The notes beneath the pieces were generated by a model, which saw only the letters and a program-made list of their open reading frames with translations, made no database searches and was not told the origin of the DNA. From Octopus bimaculoides (taxonomy: Eukaryota), in assembly GCF_001194135.2 (NCBI RefSeq), contig NC_069003.1, forward strand, positions 21,025,477-21,087,264: a DNA stretch of 61,788 bases, read 5' to 3'. The position numbers and the translations under genes are program-made. Shown here one piece after another: positions 41,870 through 61,429 of the stretch (the stretch's first letter is position 1; each line of letters starts with the position of its first letter).

Positions 41870-42164
41870 GGATACCATCTGTGACAAAAACAACACCATG
41901 ACATAATTCACTCTGCCAAAAATTTGGAAACGTCATGCTGTATTGCTTGGCATTCATGCTGGAAGCTCCAATATGAACAGTTCAGAGTGTTTGAGTGTCA
42001 ATCTGAAGACAGTGCAGTCTGAGGACATGTACTGAGAGTGATAAAAATCAAACATCCAGTCAACATCATGGTGTTTGGAGTGATTACTAGCGATGGTGGC
42101 ATTATGCCTCCATTCATCTTCTCATACAGCCTCATACTCAACATGGAGGCCTACATCAAGTACC
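41870..42164 (+). mobile_element. Internally deleted Tc1/mariner (maT/DD37D-like) transposase fragment
   Basis: KIKHPVNIMVFGVITSDGGIMPPFIFSYSLILNMEAYIKYL. Confidence 0.7.
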
Positions 42165-43460
42165 TGCTTGATCTGTAGAAAAGGTGTAGATAGAAACTCC
42201 ATAAGATGTACCCAGTGTAAGCTATGGACGCATAAGAAGTGCAGCAACATCAAAGGAAGGTTAACCGGGAAGATAGCTTTCGTGTGCGGCAGATGCTCAG
42301 GAGTAATAAACACTGCAGATGCTCAGAAAACTGACTCCATCACATGCCAAGGGAAGAAACTAGAAGTAGTTGATTGCTTTCACTAGCTAGGTGACCAAGT
42401 CTGTAGTGGGGGTGAATGCTCAGAGATTGTTGCCACTAGAATAAGAATAGCCTGGGCAAAGTTCAGAAAGCTCCTACCTCTACTGGTGACAAAGGGCCTC
42501 TCGTTCAGAGTGAAAGGTAGATTGTACAATGCATATGTGCAAACTGCCATGCTACACAGTAGTGAAACATGGGCCATGAATGCTGAAGACATGCATAGTC
42601 TTGAAAGAAATGAAGCTAGTATGCTCTGCTGGATGTGTAATGTCAGTGTGCACACACAACAAAGTGTAAGTGCCCTGAGAGAAATGTTGGACACAAGAAG
42701 CATTAGATGTGATGTGCAAGAGAGACAACTGTGCTGGTATGGTCATTTAGCGAGAATGGATGAGGAGAGCTGTGTGAAGAAGTGTCACTCCCTAACAGTG
42801 GAAGAAACCCATGGAAGAGGGAAACCCAGGAAGACGTGGGATGGAGTGGTGAAGCATGACCTTCGAACGTTGGGCCTCACAGAGGCAATGATGAAATGCT
42901 GAAACCTCAGGAGATATGCTGTGATTGAGAAAACCCGGCAAGTAAAGTGAGATCACAACTGTAGCCTACACCAGTGTCGCATACCCAGCCCATTTAAAAA
43001 GTACCTGTGAATTGTCGGGTGACACGCTGTGCTTGAGGAGACTATTGAGTAAAATCAAAATCAAAAATTAAATCCTAATCAAATGGAAATTGTAGTTGTG
43101 GCTGAAGCCAATTCTGCCTGACTGGCTCCCATGCCATGTAAAAAGCACTATCCAAATGTGGTCAATGCCAGCCCCACCGCCCCGACTAGCTCCTGTGCTG
43201 GTAATACATAAAAAGCACCATCTGAACATGGCTGATACCAGTTCTGCCTGACTGGCTCTCGTGCCAGTGGCATGCAAAAAGCACTCACTACCCTCTTGGA
43301 GTGGTTGGCGTTAGGAAGGGCATCCAGCTGTAGAAACATTGCCAGATCAGATTAGAGCCTGGTGCAGCCTCCTGGCTTGCCAGTCCTCAGTCAAATCGTC
43401 CAACCCATGCCAGCATGGAAAACAGACGTTAAATGATGGTGATGATGATGATCATGATGA
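42161..43460 (+). mobile_element. 5'-truncated RTE-clade LINE with PHD-like finger, C-terminal RT region and 3' UTR ending in (GAT)n
   Basis: CLICRKGVDRNSIRCTQCKLWTHKKC...CGRC; LEVVD.F..LGD; RIAWAKFRKLLPLL; KGRLY...V..AMLHSSETW; GKPRKTWDGVVKHDL. The UTR is shared with short copies at ~41600-41815, 30880-31100, 46745-46860 and 55720-55870. Confidence 0.85.
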
Positions 43461-43954
43461 TGACCTGTATATAAGGTCATAAATGACAGAAATATAGTTT
43501 GATGAAATTTTATTTAACAATATCAAAATTCTAATATCATGACAAATTGTTTCATAACTTAAAAACATGTAAATAATTTATATTTTTATATTTAATAATA
43601 AATAAATTTCTTCTATGTCTGCATTAATGCAAAATAATGCAAAATTTAAGTTATGTCCTCAGGTGAAAGAAAGTTTTTGTTAAATAGTTGGTTCTCAATG
43701 TAACTTTATAGAAATGCATATTAATATTGTTTTTCCATATACTTACCTTGTATGCTTTAATCTATCCTAATCTACTATACTAGATTATATTAATCTTGTC
43801 CTACATTATAACCTATTCACTATTTACTTGCATATTTGAACCTTTAATCTTTAATTTAGTATTTTTCTTGTTGATATCAAACTCTTTATTTTGCAAATTC
43901 TGTCTCTATAAATATATGAATTTCCTGTCTTTATACCAAAATTATCTAATAATT

Positions 43955-44476
43955 GTGATGGTTTGTTGCCAACTTAATATGACATTCCCAGGAAAGGGAA
44001 GAATGCTACTGCTATTTATCCCCAGGTAACACCGTTTCCAGTTGACTATGTGACACAATCGTTCTGTGTCGTTATGTTTTCAAACAGGGGAGATAAGCAC
44101 CTCCACCCAGCAAAGCCAGCATCCAGAGACTAGTTTCAGAGTCATTGCTCTTCATCAGTCTGGAATATCTTGATTTGCTAGCTATTGATGCTTATTCACC
44201 TTTGAAAACTTATAGAATTTCAAGTGAAATAAATTCACTGATCTACAAAATTAGAAATATTGCATTTCTAAATCTCTCAGAAAGACTTATACAGTAGCAG
44301 CACGATAAAGTGATGTTTGTTGCCAACTTAATATGGCAGTACCAGGAAAGGGAAGAATGCTTCTGCTATTTAGCCCCAGAAAACATCGTTTCCAGTTAGC
44401 TATGTGACACAAGCATTGTGTGTCCTTATGTTTTAAACCAGAGGAGATAAGCACCTCTACCCAGCAAAGCCAGCAT
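43955..44476 (-). ncRNA. Retrozyme-like 1.5-mer with intact type I hammerhead (locus 2)
   Basis: ~165-bp direct repeats with period 354. Minus strand 44164-44122: TCCAGA-CTGATGA-AGAG-caatga-CTCT-GAAAC-ta-GTC-TCTGGA, with all core nucleotides and stems I, II and III paired. Confidence 0.85.
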
Positions 44477-44559
44477 TTAATATTGTTCATATTTTCTTGT
44501 TGATATCAATCCCTATATTTCATAAATATTGTCTCTAAATACTTTTTAGTTTCAGTTTG

Positions 44560-44885
44560 TTATTATTATTATTATTTTGGTTTTCATCCTTTCGGGGTTG
44601 ATAAATTAAATACCAGTGAAACACTGGGGTCGATGTAATTGACTTGTCTCCTCTCCCAAAATGTCAGGCCTTGTGCCTTTTGTAGAAAGGATTCTTCTTC
44701 TTCTTCTTATTATTATTATTATTAAGGTGGTGAGCTGGCAGAATTGTTAGCAGGTCGACTTTGCCTTTCATTCTTTCAGGGTCGATAAATTAAGCACCAG
44801 TAATACACTGGGGTCGATGTAATCCACTAGTCCCCTCCCACCAAATTTCAGACCTTGTGCCTATAGTAGAAAGGATTATTATTAT
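44560..44885 (+). mobile_element. Two family-A-related SINE copies in (TTA)n context
   Basis: CATCCTTTCGGGGTTGATAAATTAA and CTGGGGTCGATGTAAT blocks, GTAGAAAGGATT tails. Confidence 0.7.
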
Positions 44886-45481
44886 TATTATATTTTTTCT
44901 CTATGTTTATGATCTTTTATTTTCTGAATTTTTAGTAATAAATATAACTCTTTCCTTTTATTGTACAAATGATATCTATTTGTTACTTTTTAATTATATT
45001 ACTAAAATTCCCTTCCAGCTATTAGAAAACCCTCTTAGTAATTTATATCAAATTTATTATTATTGTCTTCCATAATCTTTTGAAATTTTAACTTTGTATT
45101 CCTCTAATGTTTTTGTCGAGAATTTAGTATTCAACAAAGACTTTGTTTCACCTGAGGACATAACTTAAATTCTGCATTATTTGAAGAATTTTTTGCATTT
45201 TGCATTATTCAGACATGTAAGTAATTTATTTATTCTCAGATTTAATAATATAAACTATCTACATGTTCTCAAGTTACAAAACAATTTGTCGTGATATTAG
45301 AATTTTCTTATTGTTCAATAAAATGTCATCAAATTATTTCTCAGTCATTTATGACTTTATACACTCCTCATCATTTTCTCTTGTATCGTACCATATACTC
45401 TATATGTTTTGTACAACGAAACATTAAGGAGCTTTTTTTATGAGTACTGCCGGATTACTTGAATCCATTGTGACTCATATA

Positions 45482-46128: not shown

Positions 46129-48134
46129 TTTTACTATATATATATATATATATATNNNNNNNNNNNNNNNNNNNNNNNNNNNNNNNNNNNNNNNNNNNNN
46201 NNNNNNNNNNNNNNNNNNNNNNNNNNNNNNNNNNNNNNNNNNNNNNNNNNNNNNNNNNNNNNNNNNNNNNNNNNNNNNNNNNNNNNNNNNNNNNNNNNNN
46301 NNNNNNNNNNNNNNNNNNNNNNNNNNNNNNNNNNNNNNNNNNNNNNNNNNNNNNNNNNNNNNNNNNNNNNNNNNNNNNNNNNNNNNNNNNNNNNNNNNNN
46401 NNNNNNNNNNNNNNNNNNNNNNNNNNNNNNNNNNNNNNNNNNNNNNNNNNNNNNNNNNNNNNNNNNNNNNNNNNNNNNNNNNNNNNNNNNNNNATATATA
46501 TATATATATATATATACTCACATATTCACACACACACATATTAATGTTTGTTTTTATGTCAAGTTATATATAAAAGGTATTTTACTTTAAACTGAAGGAT
46601 TACTCAATACATTTTGTAGAGTGCATACTTATTATTGTTTTACACAAAGGGTGACAGTGACTTCAATGTTTCGGTCTATCTCCAGACAATGAAGGCTAAC
46701 AGGCTGAAACTACTTCAAAGACACTCTCACCACTATAAAAGTATAATGTATACAATCATCATCATCATCATCATCATCACCATCATCATTTAATACCTGT
46801 TTTCTATGCTGGCATGGTTTTAATGGTTTGACAGGATCTGGTGAGGCACAAGGCTGCATTGTGTTGTGTGTGTGTGTGTGTGTGTGTTTATAATGTTCAG
46901 TGACATTTTCCCCTAACTCCGAGGGATTCCATTAGACTGTTTTACCTTCTACCTTAGATACAAACTAAATAACCTGTTTCTGCTCCCTTCTCAATATGTC
47001 CCCTCTCATCTTGTCTCTCATTGACCTATATCTATTTCCACCCTCCACCCCATATCCCACATATTTATATTTTTTATCTATTATCATTTTGGATTTACAC
47101 CCTTACCCCCACGTACCTCCACCCTACCCCAACCCCTACCCCCACTGGCTCTTTATTCTATTTGTTAATTTCTTTATGGAAGACTCTTCAAACGTGATCA
47201 TAATGCTCTCATTTTTTTAATGATTTCACTTCCAAGTCCTGCCAGGGTTAACTTGCCCTTCTGAAGTGAATAAAATCCAGCACCCATCAATCAGTAGGAT
47301 TAACTTTAACCCTAAACCTAACCCAACATATTCTTTTCTACTCTAGGCACAAGGCCCGAAATATGCAACTGGTACTTAATTATCAACCTTAATTTATCGA
47401 CCCCATGAAAGGCAAAGTCAACCTCAGTGGAATTTGAACTCAGAACGTAAAGACAGACAAAATTCTGCTAAGCATTTCACCCAGCATGCTAATGTTTCCT
47501 ATTTCTTTATTGCCCACAAGGGGCTAAACATAGAGGGAACAAACAAGGACAGACAAAGGGATTAAGTCGATTACATCGACCCCAGTGCATAACTGGTACT
47601 TAATTTATCGATCCCGAAAGGATGAAAGGCAAAGTTGACCTCAGCGGAATTTGAACTCAGAACATAACAGCAGACAAAATACCGCTAAGTATTTCGCCCG
47701 GCGTGCTAATGTTTCTGCCAGCTCGCTGCCTTCCTAACCCAACCTATTAGGGTATATACAGTCAGTTAGTTCTTCGCATCTCCCACCTTCCCAACATTAA
47801 CCATTTTGATACCAACCTACCTGAGACCACCCTGCTGATTCTATGATACAAGTTTCCTGTTCTAAAGTGATCTAAATTAAAATATGTGGGTATTTGACTG
47901 GAACCTATTGCTGTTGCTGCTTATAGTTGTTTACAGAGTAAGAGGAGAAGGAGGTGGCAAGAGAGATTACTGAAAGATTAGAAGGAGGGTGAATTTTCTC
48001 CTTAAGAGGAGAGAACTGCTTCACAGTTTACTAATTTTTTTTATCATAAGAAGTTCTTTTTTCTGTGAGTGAAAGAGCATATGTAATAATATTTCCACAT
48101 GATCCATTTGTTTTTAGGTGTCCTAATAAATGTA

Positions 48135-57295: not shown

Positions 57296-60275
57296 ATAGG
57301 AAAAGTCCAAAGAAGGGAAGACAGAGAAAGAAAATCGCCAACGATGCACACATGGTCACACATATATGTATATATGTATGTATGTACATGTACATATATA
57401 CATACATATATACATACATATATACATACATGCATACATATGTCTGTTATTACCAAGTAATTTTCACAATAGAATGCTTTGGCAGACTTTCAGAATAGCA
57501 CACCAATGTAAGGTGGATCTTCTCCGTTTTAATTGGGATCTTTCAAATTTTTTTTTTTTTACTACACCCTTTTTTTGAAAATTTATGAATCTACCCCTCT
57601 ACCTACCTTCCAGACTGATTTTGTCCACTTTTCCTTTTTGCACTATGCACTTAAAAATAATAGGAAACACCTTTTTGTTTCAAGAAAAGAAATAAAAATT
57701 GTTTTATGAACTTACGATGAAAGTAAACAAACAAATAATTTATTCTCAAACACATGATAATGCTAATACAATAGCATGACCAGAATAAACTATCCATATA
57801 CTGCAGATAAAAATTGTTACTGGCCAGCCATGAGATTAGAACTCACATCTCTCTGATTACATGTCAAGTGCTTTAACCTTTAAGCTAAACTGCCCAGCAA
57901 CGAATTGTTCTGCAATTTTAGGATTTATGAGAGTTAGAGGTTGGGAAGCCAACCAACTAAGGGATAGTATCTATCCAATTATTCATACCCAAATGCTGGT
58001 TATTGTGTGGCAATCTCGCAATTGAGAGTCATATATGGGCGGGGGGTAAAAAGTGGTTTACCCTTAATTTATACAGCAAATAAGAGAAAATGGAGAGGAC
58101 ATACATCAGCTGATAGACATTCCAGTGTGCCTATTTATTCAAAAGTATTAGAAAGTATTAGAAGAGTACATACACATGTATTAACTATGTGTTACACACA
58201 CATCTATCAATTAATATTACAGGAAAGAGTATAAGATCAGTTCCTTACAGCCGTTTCTGCGAAGAGGCAACAAAATCATCCATGCTATCTCCATCTCTTC
58301 GGTGTTCTGTAAGGATGGGCAGATAAAGTTTGGATGATGAGTGTGCCTCTAGTCTTCTTCAGAGGGTCTAACTGGTTATGAGGGTTAATACATATAATAA
58401 ACGGTTAACAATAGGTACAGTGTATTTGTCATTATTGAAAAGGGCAGAAAAAGAATAGGAGCAAATATGAGGCTGTGAGAGAAGTGCAGCTTATTAAAAT
58501 GAATTAGGTATAAGAAGGGGAAATAAGCTACAAACTTCCTATGGTGTATTCCAAGATTCATGTTACCTTGTCCAATGGTGGATAGGTGAGGGTAGTCGTT
58601 CTTGGGAGGAGTTTATAGGAAGGGTGTATTTAGGCAGTAGTTCACATTATGTTTACATAGAAATGCAGTGGTGAATTTGAAGGTATTGTCCGAGTTACGG
58701 AGGTGAAAGTTCATATATAAAGTGCCAGCTAGTAGGTGCAACATTGTGGATGGTATGACATAAGTAGCTTATGATGGTAAACCCATCATGGGAAGATTTG
58801 GTATATAAGTGTACTAATGGGAGTAAGGAACCAGTTGATGACTAAAGTGTGGTGTTAGTGTTCATTATTTTTTTGCCGATCCACTAGTCTCTGAATCCCT
58901 TTGTGTAGTGAGGTGGGGTCATGGTCAGTCCTACAACCTAATTGGTCAGCTATTTTTTTGAAAACCATGATGTGGTTCCGGTTCGTTGATGGTTAACAGA
59001 TAAGACAAAAACAAATCAAATGAATATATAAACCATGGCCAGTAAGGGCAAATAAAAGAGCAAAGTAGGATTAAAAACAGGTAAATAAGTGAGTAGGTGC
59101 AATAACTAAAATAATGGGACTTAGGGAGGAGGATCCTAATGAACAGCATACGAAAAGTAAAAGAGTATAAACCGTATAAAAATATAGAAATATAAAATAT
59201 ATATCTATCTGTTGGGGGAATCTACTGTATATGGTTCAACATAATAGAGGAGCTGGATAGGGGATTGATTATTGCTGGAAGGCAGAAGAAGGAGGATTTT
59301 GTAAATAGGGACAAAAATGGACATGTTTGTTTTGCTAACTTATAGTTATTCAGTGATAAAACTTATACAAGTAAGATATTAGATATAAAGTATTAAAGGA
59401 ATGGCACTGTGTTATAGTATTAGATTATTAAGTTAAGTGTTTTATTTAAAAGGGGTCATTTGAAGAAAATGTTTACATGGATATATATTAACTGCTATCT
59501 GTAATTCTGTGTATAGCTAAAGGGGCGGGGTAACCTGAGTATTTCTAGCTACTTAATTGATTGATTAATTAATTAATTAATTCTGTATTGGAATAGTACT
59601 CAATTTAGGTCAAAGGGAAGAGGTAGTATCAGTTGCAGTTGCAAATTGGAGTCAACTATGGGGTGTATTATGTTGTAGTTTAGCTATATTTATAATTTAA
59701 GCTAGTGGCCAGTGTGCTATATTATTATTACTACTATTAATTATTATTCTGCTCATTTCTAGGGTGCATTTTAATGACTAGGTGCTAGTATGTATGATGA
59801 ACTATTCCTGCGTATATTTTCTAAAAGTTCATAAGAGCATGGTTCTTAGCCACAGTGTATAAGTTACATTTATGTAGAGTACTCCTAGTAGGGGTATGGA
59901 GTAACATACTATTGGTGGACAAAGACGATGGGGTATTTCTATCAGTACTTGTCTATACTCATTCTCCAGCAATCATACATACAAATATATCTATAGGCCC
60001 ACACATGCTCCTATACTAATACTAATCAGGTATATATTCACATCCATATCCATGTGTGTGCACCATTATATACATGCAAATCCATACTGGCCCTTACCCA
60101 CACCCTTACCTCAACACATATGCACACATATATATACATCCATTTCTACAACTATGGATGCATATGTGTGTAAGCATCCAAGAACCTATGGCTTTTTACA
60201 TAGTCTCTCATATATACCTATGCAAATACAAATATATGCATACATACACATGTCCATACCTATATCTATATAAGC

Positions 60276-60952: not shown

Positions 60953-61429
60953 ATATATATATGTGTGTGTGTAAATATGTGTATATATATATACATATAT
61001 GTGTGTGTGTATGTATATATATTTCTTTATTGCCCATGGGGGACTAAACATAGAGGACAAACAAGGACAGACAAAGGTATTAAGTCGATTACATCAACCC
61101 CAGTACACAACTGGTACTTAATTTATCAACCCCGGAAGGAAGACAGGCTAAGTCGACCTCAGCGGAATTTGAACTCAGAATGTAGCGGCAGACGAAATAC
61201 CGCTAAGCACGTCGCCCGGCATGCTAACGTTTCTATATATATGTTTTCGCGTGTGTGTATGTATATACAGCAGATAAGAAAACGGAGAGGATATAAAATC
61301 GACAGACATCAGCCGGTAAACATTCCAGTATGTCTATTTATTGAAATGTATTGGATGAATACACACCCATGTATGAGTGGTACAGATTAGCAAGTGGAAA
61401 AAGCCGGTAACTGCATAAACAAGGGTGTG

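What the first reader, a model, noticed from the sequence alone, without database searches (positions are those of the whole stretch)
43955..44476. Intact minimal hammerhead ribozyme in a 354-bp tandem unit: candidate cephalopod retrozyme
Seen: minus strand 44164-44122 folds as a complete type I hammerhead (stem I UCCAGA/UCUGGA, CUGAUGA, stem II AGAG/CUCU, GAAAC, palindromic stem III ACUAGU, GUC cleavage triplet). It lies between two ~165-bp direct repeats 354 bp apart, and homology of the upstream repeat (44476) begins 5 nt after the position equivalent to the cleavage site. There is no ORF. Established: minimal hammerheads with palindromic stem III occur in PLE termini and in metazoan retrozymes, which are tandem monomers of a few hundred nt that yield circular RNAs. 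Inference: this is an insertion copied from a ribozyme-processed RNA. I do not know whether this family has been described in cephalopods.
Basis: partly seen in the sequence, partly recalled or inferred. Interest (0 to 1): 0.9.

Follow-up and report, generated by a model that had tools for sequence, protein, structure and literature searches.

The report
Hammerhead ribozyme retroelement copy in octopus
An octopus genome window holds an old, 1.5-unit copy of a small non-coding mobile element with one self-cleaving "hammerhead" RNA motif; such elements are already known in many animals (animal retrozymes, relatives of Penelope-like elements), so this is an ordinary new example, though its ends hint at how it was copied.

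Summary
Minus strand 44164-44122 carries every invariant hammerhead core base. Helix I has 6 bp, helix II has 4 bp, and helix III is the palindrome ACUAGU, which can only pair between two ribozyme copies. This architecture appeared in 0 of 3000 shuffled windows. The motif sits between two 167-nt direct repeats (89% identical, period 354). The upstream repeat starts 5 nt after the equivalent of the cleavage site. The host is an octopod.

The retrozyme reading is only partly supported. The locus holds 1.47 units and one hammerhead, so it cannot release a unit-length RNA. The 10.1-11.1 pair is A-U rather than the usual G-C. Rfam reports no hammerhead. I found no second copy of the unit, because the collections hold almost no cephalopod DNA.

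My best reading is a decayed insertion of a non-autonomous, Penelope-like-element-type retroelement (animal non-LTR retrozyme). Its 5' end lies at a hammerhead-cut RNA end. Its 3' end lies in the most AC-rich 14-mer of the insert, next to an ATT-rich target, which resembles the internal initiation described for a Penelope-like element.

It is a new member of a known kind. Interest is modest.

The parts
44122..44164 (-). Type-I hammerhead ribozyme motif. Helix I is 44164-44159 paired with 44127-44122. The core CUGAUGA is 44158-44152. Helix II is 44151-44148 paired with 44141-44138, with loop CAAUGA. GAAA is 44137-44134. The palindrome ACUAGU is 44134-44129. C17 is 44128, and the predicted cut is 44128|44127.
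   Evidence: A monomeric helix III (2 bp with a 2-nt loop) is sterically impossible. The two-copy 'double hammerhead' evaluates at -22.8 kcal/mol.
44310..44476 (-). Repeat A, the first 167 nt of unit 1 (unit positions 6-172). It is 5'-truncated by 5 nt relative to the hammerhead cut position.
44165..44309 (-). Single-copy part of the unit, between repeat A and the hammerhead. It is AT-rich and has several stop codons in every frame.
   Evidence: It shows no similarity to the flanks.
43955..44122 (-). Repeat B, the start of unit 2. It is 89% identical to A (8 transitions, 10 transversions, 1 indel).
43955..43968 (-). 3' end of the insert, CAACAAACCAUCAC (13 of 14 bases are A or C). It is the single most AC-rich 14-mer of the 522-nt insert. 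It lies just 3' of a small predicted hairpin, about 168 nt 3' of the cut. It is the candidate start site of reverse transcription.
   Evidence: The parallel with the Penelope-like element PAc is from PMC11167929.
44477..44541 (-). Flank copy X. It ends exactly at the 5' junction (..AUAUUAA|AUGCUGG). It is preceded by an (AAT)n microsatellite at 44560-44576.
43851..43914 (-). Flank copy X', about 76% identical to X. It is a candidate long target-site duplication or an older local duplication. A 40-nt AT-rich spacer (43915-43954, starting AATTATT) separates it from the end of B.
   Evidence: (Smith-Waterman score 55 against a shuffle maximum of 31).

Best explanation
This is an old, non-coding, 522-bp insertion (44476 to 43955, minus strand) holding 1.47 units of a 354-nt hammerhead-bearing retroelement. 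The element belongs to the animal 'non-LTR retrozyme' type, now regarded as a non-autonomous derivative of Penelope-like elements (PLEs).

Shown: the hammerhead core and helices, the unit structure, and both junctions.

Inferred: a source array was transcribed into an RNA of more than one unit. Hammerheads of this type have a helix III too short to fold alone, so two copies pair through ACUAGU and cut after GUC. One such cut made the 5' end of the template (UCUGG|AUGCUGG...). The next hammerhead stayed uncut. A PLE-type reverse transcriptase/endonuclease nicked AT-rich, ATT-containing DNA beside an (AAT)n microsatellite. It began cDNA synthesis inside the RNA at the AC-rich site about 168 nt past the second hammerhead and ran to the processed 5' end, losing 5 nt at the junction.

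The resulting copy has only one ribozyme, so it cannot release a unit-length or circular RNA. It has since drifted (A and B differ by 11%). The intact core needs no selection to explain it.
For: - Hammerhead: all core bases are present, helix I has 6 bp and helix II 4 bp, and helix III is palindromic. There were 0 comparable hits in 3000 shuffles, and the estimate is about 0.006 per genome by composition.
- Dimer requirement: a monomeric helix III is impossible, while the double hammerhead evaluates at -22.8 kcal/mol.
- Unit properties match those published for animal retrozymes: 354 bp, 37% GC, no ORF with relatives, no LTR, primer-binding site (PBS) or polypurine tract (PPT). The predicted fold is more stable than shuffles (z = -2.96, 64% paired) with helices I and II present in the minimum-energy fold. 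Published ranges are units of 150-450 bp, GC below 50%, and 350-390 bp in the mussel (PMC7229834).
- 5' junction: it lies 5 nt from the cut. The prior for falling within 5 nt is about 11/354. The flank homology X/X' ends at the same base.
- 3' junction: it lies at the end of the most AC-rich 14-mer of the insert, and the flank begins AATTATT. For the PLE PAc, nicking at 5'-ATT-3' and initiation in an AC-rich stem-loop about 85-92 nt past the hammerhead cut were shown in vitro and in genomic copies (PMC11167929).
- Insertions longer than one unit are the rule for PLEs and retrozymes (PMC8557442; PMC7761336).
- A second dimer-type hammerhead turned up in the only 20 kb of Octopus vulgaris DNA I could fetch. 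Octopus genomes therefore do carry such elements.
Against: - Only this one locus is available, with no other copy of the unit to show a family, conserved ends or covariation.
- Rfam gives no hammerhead hit even at E<=10 on 81 nt.
- A10.1-U11.1 replaces the highly conserved G-C pair, and loop-loop contacts are not recognisable, so activity may be low or absent.
- The AC-rich/ATT match was noticed after reading the PAc paper, and its distance from the cut differs (168 against about 90 nt).
- The putative target-site duplication is more diverged (about 76%) than the internal repeats (89%; Fisher p = 0.024). A 40-nt unexplained spacer separates it from the 3' junction.
- In PAc, hammerhead cleavage was not needed for insertion, and no RNA ends at the cut site were seen.
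- The window holds no PLE reading frame. The only PLEs the literature I read reports for cephalopods are old Naiad remnants, a clade without canonical hammerheads (PMC8557442).
Confidence: 0.6

Rival explanations
1. Classical retrozyme route. A unit-length RNA was cut at both ends and ligated into a 354-nt circle. A reverse transcriptase then copied it by going round about 1.5 times, and the cDNA was integrated.
For: [quoted passage not shown] The insert is 1.47 units and the unit is predicted to be well paired.
Against: A circle has no end, so a 5' junction 5 nt from the cut site would be coincidence unless the circle re-cleaved during copying. No circular RNA data are available. A and B differ by 11%, which does not distinguish one copied unit from two source units.
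Confidence: 0.2
2. DNA-level remnant. The locus was once a longer tandem array (satellite) of the 354-bp unit and shrank by unequal crossing-over or deletion. The present ends would then have nothing to do with RNA processing.
For: Hammerhead repeats occur as arrays from dimers to hundreds of units (PMC7229834; bioRxiv 10.64898/2026.07.22.740005). Concerted evolution could explain why A/B (89%) are more alike than X/X' (76%).
Against: Both ends would have to fall by chance at two meaningful positions: within 5 nt of the cut, and at the end of the most AC-rich 14-mer. The joint chance is of order 1e-3 to 1e-4, and the second coincidence is post hoc. The flank duplication ends exactly at the 5' junction.
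Confidence: 0.12
3. Fragment of an autonomous Penelope-like element. A and B would be pseudo-LTR pieces left after loss of the coding part.
For: PLE hammerheads lie in pseudo-LTRs formed by partial tandems (PMC4209133; PMC8557442). The junction features resemble PAc.
Against: Only 187 nt lie between A and B (145 nt of single-copy sequence plus the hammerhead), and they hold no trace of reverse transcriptase or GIY-YIG endonuclease. The window has no YxDD or GIY-YIG pattern in a matching context. Helix I of 6 bp and helix II of 4 bp with a 6-nt loop follow the 'canonical' animal type-I pattern, not the PLE minimal type (helix II of 6-8 bp, helix I of 2-5 bp).
Confidence: 0.08
4. Chance look-alike. 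The region would be an ordinary segmental duplication that happens to spell a hammerhead, or a C/D-box-like UGAUGA...CUGA pair with a terminal stem.
For: Rfam lists only sub-threshold C/D snoRNA matches over the motif (8-14 bits against cut-offs of 36-54). The isolated 53-nt fold is no more stable than shuffles (z = -0.93). The bare pattern CUGAUGA..GAAA..GUC is expected 0.49 times per window.
Against: With the helices required, no shuffle reaches this quality (0 of 3000), and the estimate is about 1e-7 per window. The motif also sits exactly at the unit boundary. Only 12 nt separate the 'C' and 'D' boxes, which leaves no room for a guide.
Confidence: 0.03

Closest known systems
Animal non-LTR retrozymes (Cervera & de la Pena 2020, PMC7229834), for example the 350-390-bp repeats of the mussel Mytilus galloprovincialis
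   Same: Both have a type-I hammerhead in a short (150-450 bp), low-GC, non-coding unit without LTR, primer-binding site or polypurine tract. Both have helix I of 6 bp, helix II of 4 bp and a weak palindromic helix III. Both insert as more than one unit. Both occur in the phylum Mollusca, and the unit sizes are almost the same.
   Different: Here there are only 1.47 units and one ribozyme. The 10.1-11.1 pair is A-U. No family, expression or circle has been shown. The cephalopod host was not found in the papers I could search.
Newt satellite 2 and axolotl HHR_Amex1/2 repeats (330-350 bp)
   Same: In both, the hammerhead has a helix III too weak to work alone, and it cleaves well only as a dimer of two tandem copies (PMC7229834; PMC6155905). 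The unit size is similar.
   Different: The amphibian motifs keep G10.1-C11.1 and the known loop 1-loop 2 contacts. They occur as up to about 120,000 copies in long arrays.
Penelope-like elements and their minimal hammerheads; the PAc element of Anolis (PMC4209133, PMC11167929)
   Same: Both show partial-tandem insertions and dimer-type hammerheads. Both have an AT-rich (ATT) target and a 3' end at an AC-rich site downstream of the hammerhead.
   Different: This locus has no reverse transcriptase/GIY-YIG reading frame. Its hammerhead has canonical rather than minimal proportions. The distance from the cut to the 3' end is about 168 nt rather than about 90 nt. In PAc no RNA or DNA ends at the cut site were seen, whereas here the 5' end is at the cut site.
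Schistosoma Sm-alpha SINE-like elements with hammerheads
   Same: Both are short non-autonomous retroelements carrying a type-I hammerhead (PMC6155905).
   Different: I did not compare the sequences. The Sm-alpha hammerhead is highly active. I found no recognisable polymerase III promoter boxes here by eye; this was not tested with a tool.
Plant LTR retrozymes
   Same: Both are non-autonomous retroelements in which hammerheads delimit a transcript.
   Different: The plant elements have type III hammerheads inside about 350-bp LTRs, a primer-binding site and polypurine tract, 4-bp target duplications, high GC, and Gypsy mobilisation (PMC7761336).

Membership tests
Hammerhead ribozyme, type I | Invariant core: C3 U4 G5 A6 N7 G8 A9, G12 A13 A14, the A15.1-U16.1 pair, and a non-G base at position 17 | tested here: met
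   CUGAUGA, GAAA, the A44134-U44129 partners and C44128 are all present.
Hammerhead ribozyme, type I | Three helices around the core, with helix I open-ended | tested here: met
   Helix I has 6 Watson-Crick bp and is open. Helix II has 4 Watson-Crick bp with a 6-nt loop. Helix III forms only between two copies: the monomer hairpin is impossible, and the dimer evaluates at -22.8 kcal/mol.
Hammerhead ribozyme, type I | G10.1-C11.1 pair at the base of helix II (highly conserved, PMC4209133) | tested here: not met
   The pair is A44151-U44138.
Hammerhead ribozyme, type I | Match to the Rfam covariance model for type-I hammerheads | tested here: not met
   No hammerhead family was reported at the gathering score or at E<=10 on 1.3 kb or on 81 nt. 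The Octopus vulgaris candidate hammerhead is missed as well, so the model seems blind to this short-helix-III form.
Hammerhead ribozyme, type I | Self-cleavage at the predicted bond; loop 1-loop 2 tertiary contacts | not testable with these tools
   This needs transcription assays. Past helix I there is an internal loop (9 + 7 nt) and then a 7-bp helix, but no known contact motif could be assigned.
Animal non-LTR retrozyme | Type-I hammerhead inside a short (150-450 bp) non-coding repeat of low GC, without LTR, primer-binding site or polypurine tract | tested here: met
   The unit is 354 bp with 37% GC. The longest frame is 67 aa and has no relatives.
Animal non-LTR retrozyme | At least two consecutive units, each with a complete hammerhead (criterion for an active element, bioRxiv 10.64898/2026.07.22.740005) | tested here: not met
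   There is one hammerhead in 1.47 units. Tandem Repeats Finder calls no array.
Animal non-LTR retrozyme | Many dispersed or tandem copies in the genome | not testable with these tools
   There is no second copy in the window. The protein, metagenome, viral and prokaryote collections gave nothing related and hold almost no cephalopod DNA.
Animal non-LTR retrozyme | Expression as linear and circular unit-length RNA | not testable with these tools
   No RNA data were available.
Animal non-LTR retrozyme | Stable, highly self-paired RNA | tested here: inconclusive
   The circular fold is -92 kcal/mol, z = -2.96 against shuffles, with 64% of bases paired. This rests on a single sequence.
Penelope-like element (autonomous) | Reading frame with telomerase-like reverse transcriptase and GIY-YIG endonuclease | tested here: not met
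   No such frame lies in or near the element, and no plausible YxDD or GIY-YIG pattern occurs in the window. The neighbouring frames are a PHD finger and LINE-type fragments.
Penelope-like element (mobilisation signature) | AT-rich (ATT) target and a 3' end at an AC-rich internal initiation site downstream of the hammerhead | tested here: inconclusive
The 3' end is CAACAAACCAUCAC and the flank starts AATTATT.

The most novel reading that the evidence does not exclude
This copy may preserve in DNA both ends of a retrotransposition intermediate. The 5' end would have been made in vivo by hammerhead self-cleavage. The 3' end would have been set by Penelope-type internal initiation at an AC-rich site. 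If octopus copies of this family pile up with 5' ends at +1 to +6 of the cut site, that would be direct genomic evidence that the hammerheads of PLE-type elements define the 5' end of the template RNA. In vitro work on PAc could not demonstrate this role, and the reviews I read call it unknown.
Probability: 0.3. Interest if true: 0.6.

Novelty: new member of a known kind. Interest (0 to 1): 0.33.

Why it matters
Hammerhead-bearing repeats and their link to Penelope-like elements are well described in cnidarians, a mussel, insects, amphibians and other vertebrates. An octopus example extends the host list and is not a surprise in itself.

Its value is as a lead. Octopus genomes appear to hold several families of dimer-type hammerheads: I found two in about 82 kb of sequence. 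This copy's ends coincide with the ribozyme cut site and with an AC-rich site like the one where a PLE reverse transcriptase starts. A genome-wide census of copy ends could test what these ribozymes are for.

Tried and rejected
1. Rfam/Infernal was run at the gathering score and at permissive thresholds on the window, on 1.3 kb and on 81 nt. No ribozyme family appeared, only weak C/D snoRNA look-alikes. I rejected the snoRNA reading because only 12 nt lie between the boxes.
2. I searched for further copies in three ways, without success. Self-BLAST of the window found none. A protein-word search with the 67-aa frame over repeat A found no candidate. Exact-pattern scans of viral, prokaryote-genome and metagenome collections found none or only unrelated hits. 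Most of the 19 metagenome hits are coding-sequence coincidences.
3. I tried to reach an orthologous or empty site. The window's LINE frame is not on record. Its relatives are paralogues, one on an Octopus vulgaris chromosome and one on an ENA contig. The ChaC exon search returned only short exon-like fragments from other organisms at no more than 91% identity.
4. I tested whether the flank repeat X is a degenerate copy of the unit's single-copy part, which would indicate a longer old array. The similarity is not significant.
5. I looked for a PLE reading frame nearby and found none.
6. A second hammerhead-like hit at 29615-29548 has an AT-only helix I and a G-U-containing helix II with a 21-nt loop. 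I judged it to be chance.
7. MAFFT misplaces helix I when aligning the two octopus hammerheads, so I made no pair count on that alignment.

Full report
**Observation.** On the minus strand the sequence reads UCCAGA-CUGAUGA-AGAG-CAAUGA-CUCU-GAAA-C-UA-G-U-C^UCUGGA (44164-44122).
- All invariant hammerhead positions are present: C3-A9, G12-A14, A15.1/U16.1 and C17.
- Helix I has 6 Watson-Crick pairs and is open-ended, which makes the motif type I. Helix II has 4 pairs closed by a 6-nt loop.
- Helix III would be 2 bp closed by a 2-nt loop. This cannot form as a hairpin; ViennaRNA returns a forbidden-structure energy. The six bases ACUAGU are a palindrome, so two copies can build the 'double hammerhead' known from newt and viroid RNAs. 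That structure evaluates at -22.8 kcal/mol, against -27.2 for the best dimer fold.
- The bare pattern CUGAUGA..GAAA..GUC is expected 0.49 times per window. The isolated 53-nt fold is unremarkable (z = -0.93).
- Once the helices are required, the picture changes. My descriptor finds this as the only strict hit on either strand. None of 3000 dinucleotide-shuffled windows gives one; looser grades occur 0.005-0.025 times per window. A composition-based estimate for the compact palindromic form is about 1e-7 per window, or about 0.006 per 2.7-Gb genome.
- I conclude that the motif is not a chance product.

**Repeat structure.**
- 43955-44122 and 44310-44476 are direct repeats, 88.7-89% identical and 354 bp apart. 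They differ by 8 transitions, 10 transversions and 1 indel.
- The locus is therefore A (167 nt), then 145 nt of single-copy sequence, then the hammerhead, then B (168 nt). That is 1.47 units of a 354-nt unit with a single ribozyme.
- Tandem Repeats Finder does not call it. The unit has no other copy in the window.
- Homology between the copies starts at AUGCUGG, 5 nt after the cut position. The 14 bases further upstream match at only 2 positions.
- The unit has 37% GC. As a circle it folds to -92 kcal/mol (z = -2.96, 64% paired). Helices I and II appear in the minimum-energy fold of the linear monomer.
- The longest reading frame is 67 aa and has no relatives among 5.8 billion clustered proteins.

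**Host and surroundings.**
- The window is gap-rich, AT-rich eukaryotic DNA.
- A LINE-type frame next to the element has its closest named relative in Octopus vulgaris. The 20 kb fetched around that gene come from chromosome OX597824.1 of assembly GCA_951406725.2. They share several dispersed repeat families with the window at 80-93% identity. The host is an octopod.
- The element lies between two + strand SINE copies with an (AAT)n tract on one side and a LINE 3' fragment with a PHD-finger frame on the other.
- The whole 1.4-kb stretch is bracketed by inverted repeats of about 250 bp.
- A ChaC-family first exon lies at 12404-12538 on the + strand, and no further exons occur in the window. The element probably sits antisense in that gene's first intron; this is an inference.
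- No reverse transcriptase/GIY-YIG frame of a Penelope-like element is present.

**Junctions.** At the 5' junction the flank reads ..AUAUUAA and is followed directly by AUGCUGG. At the 3' junction the insert ends CAACAAACCAUCAC. Thirteen of these 14 bases are A or C, and it is the single most AC-rich 14-mer in the 522-nt insert. It lies just after a small predicted hairpin. The flank then continues AATTATTAGATAAT.

Frangieh et al. (PMC11167929) showed for the Anolis PLE PAc that the endonuclease prefers AT-rich DNA with 5'-ATT-3'. They also showed that reverse transcription starts inside the RNA, in an AC-rich stem-loop 111-118 nt into the reading frame, with the hammerhead cut 26 nt after the start codon. 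Genomic copies end at those sites. The architecture here is the one expected if a PLE enzyme copied a more-than-unit-length transcript of a non-autonomous relative, starting at the AC-rich site past one hammerhead and running off at a 5' end made by the previous hammerhead.

The 5' coincidence has a prior of about 3%. The 3' coincidence is rarer, but I noticed it after reading that paper, so it carries less weight.

**Flanking duplication.**
- A 65-nt stretch, X (44541-44477), ends exactly at the 5' junction. It recurs as X' (43914-43851) downstream of the insert. The Smith-Waterman score is 55 against a shuffle maximum of 31. The geometry resembles a long target-site duplication.
- Two things do not fit. 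X and X' are only about 76% identical while A and B are 89% (Fisher p = 0.024). A 40-nt AT-rich spacer unrelated to the unit separates the end of B from X'.
- Three explanations remain open: faster decay of AT-rich DNA or homogenisation of A and B; an older local duplication; or a transduced flank from the source copy. Only an empty orthologous site could settle this.

**Negative checks.**
- Rfam reports no hammerhead or other ribozyme, whether at the gathering score on the whole window or at E<=10 on 1.3 kb or 81 nt. Only sub-threshold C/D-box snoRNA models align to UGAUGA...CUGA.
- A second, independent octopus hammerhead candidate is also missed. I therefore read the Rfam result as insensitivity to hammerheads with a vestigial helix III, not as evidence against the motif. 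I could not run a validated positive control.
- The 10.1-11.1 pair is A-U. Cervera & de la Pena list G10.1-C11.1 as highly conserved (PMC4209133). Activity may therefore be reduced, and 'intact' is not established.

**Comparison with what is known.**
- Animal type-I hammerheads typically have helix I of 6 bp, helix II of 4 bp, and a helix III of 1-2 bp capped by a small palindromic loop, and they work as dimers.
[quoted passage not shown] The mussel units are 350-390 bp (PMC7229834).
- A 2026 preprint argues that these are non-autonomous derivatives of PLE terminal repeats. It counts as active only arrays with at least two complete hammerheads, treating monomers as non-mobile offspring (10.64898/2026.07.22.740005).
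- This locus matches the class in unit size, composition, ribozyme architecture and more-than-unit insertion. It fails the two-ribozyme criterion, so it is best called a dead derivative copy.
- I found no paper describing hammerhead elements in cephalopods. Craig et al. report only ancient Naiad PLE remnants there, a clade lacking canonical hammerheads (PMC8557442). The autonomous partner is therefore unknown.

**A second octopus hammerhead.** The 20 kb of O. vulgaris fetched for host identification contain, on the minus strand at L020 19530-19488, the sequence ACCU-CUGAUGA-GAACC-AAAUAA-GGUUU-GAAA-AUCGAU-UA^AGGU. Its helix III is the palindrome AAUCGAUU, and its helix I can be extended. It lies in a stretch of about 240 bp bounded by (TA)n on both sides. 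Its helices differ in sequence from the window's motif but keep the same architecture. This suggests that octopus genomes carry several families of dimer-type hammerheads at appreciable density.

**Verdict.** The interpretation as a retrozyme-type insertion copied from ribozyme-processed RNA is the best available one (about 0.6). The copy is an inactive 1.47-mer, the family is unverified, and a circular intermediate is neither needed nor favoured by the 5' end. The class is already known, so the finding is a new member of a known kind. Its modest interest could rise if a genome-wide census confirms that copy ends pile up at the cut site.

Noticed in passing
L020:19488-19530 (minus strand; Octopus vulgaris OX597824.1): A second type-I hammerhead candidate, with palindromic helix III AAUCGAUU. 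It lies in a stretch of about 240 bp bounded by (TA)n on both sides and is unrelated in sequence to the window's unit. Rfam does not report it either.
   Followed up: partly
window 43457-43715 and 45100-45375: Inverted repeats of about 250 bp (about 86% complementary) bracket the 1.4 kb that holds the hammerhead element and two SINE copies. They could be the ends of a foldback or terminal-inverted-repeat (TIR) element, or an inverted duplication. They have no other copies in the window.
   Followed up: partly
window 12404-12538 (+): First coding exon of a ChaC-family (gamma-glutamylcyclotransferase) gene (Pfam PF04752, E = 1e-20). No further exons lie in the window, so the following 49 kb or more are probably intron.
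   Followed up: partly
window 44080-44145 and 44287-44490 (minus strand): The AUG in hammerhead loop 2 opens a frame that runs on into the repeat: 21 aa through B, and the same frame stays open for 67 aa through A. In PAc the reading frame also starts inside the hammerhead. This frame has no relatives and is probably meaningless.
   Followed up: partly
window 29548-29615 (minus strand): A weak hammerhead-like match with an AT-only 5-bp helix I and a G-U-containing helix II with a 21-nt loop, next to a SINE copy. I judged it to be chance.
   Followed up: partly
L004:1709-1734, L018:185-210, L019:150-175 (JGI metagenome Ga0081606): Three contigs of one sample share a repeated CUGAUGA-AGAG-CCAUAG/A-CUCU-GAAAC motif with similar flanks. 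It may be a hammerhead family of an unknown organism; I could not find its helix I.
   Followed up: partly
L020:16581-18103: In O. vulgaris a tRNA-derived SINE sequence is amplified into a tandem array of 7-8 units with a 184-bp period. The same SINE occurs dispersed in the window (for example 29360-29542, 47388-47683, 61020-61201).
   Followed up: no
window 167-1050 (+), 34747-35229 (+), 42084-42899 (+): Remnants of mobile elements: Tc1/mariner-type transposase pieces (HTH and DDE_3), a reverse-transcriptase fragment, and a PHD-finger frame followed by a LINE-type C-terminal frame.
   Followed up: partly
window 57822-57894 (minus strand): The only Rfam hit at the gathering score is a tRNA-like sequence (35.8 bits). 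It could be a tRNA gene or the head of a tRNA-derived SINE.
   Followed up: no
L021 (ENA metagenome assembly ERZ22665968, contig k127_13032110): A 1.6-kb 'metagenome' contig is 78% identical to the window's LINE and SINE sequence at 42163-43443. Cephalopod-like host DNA is therefore present in that metagenome.
   Followed up: no
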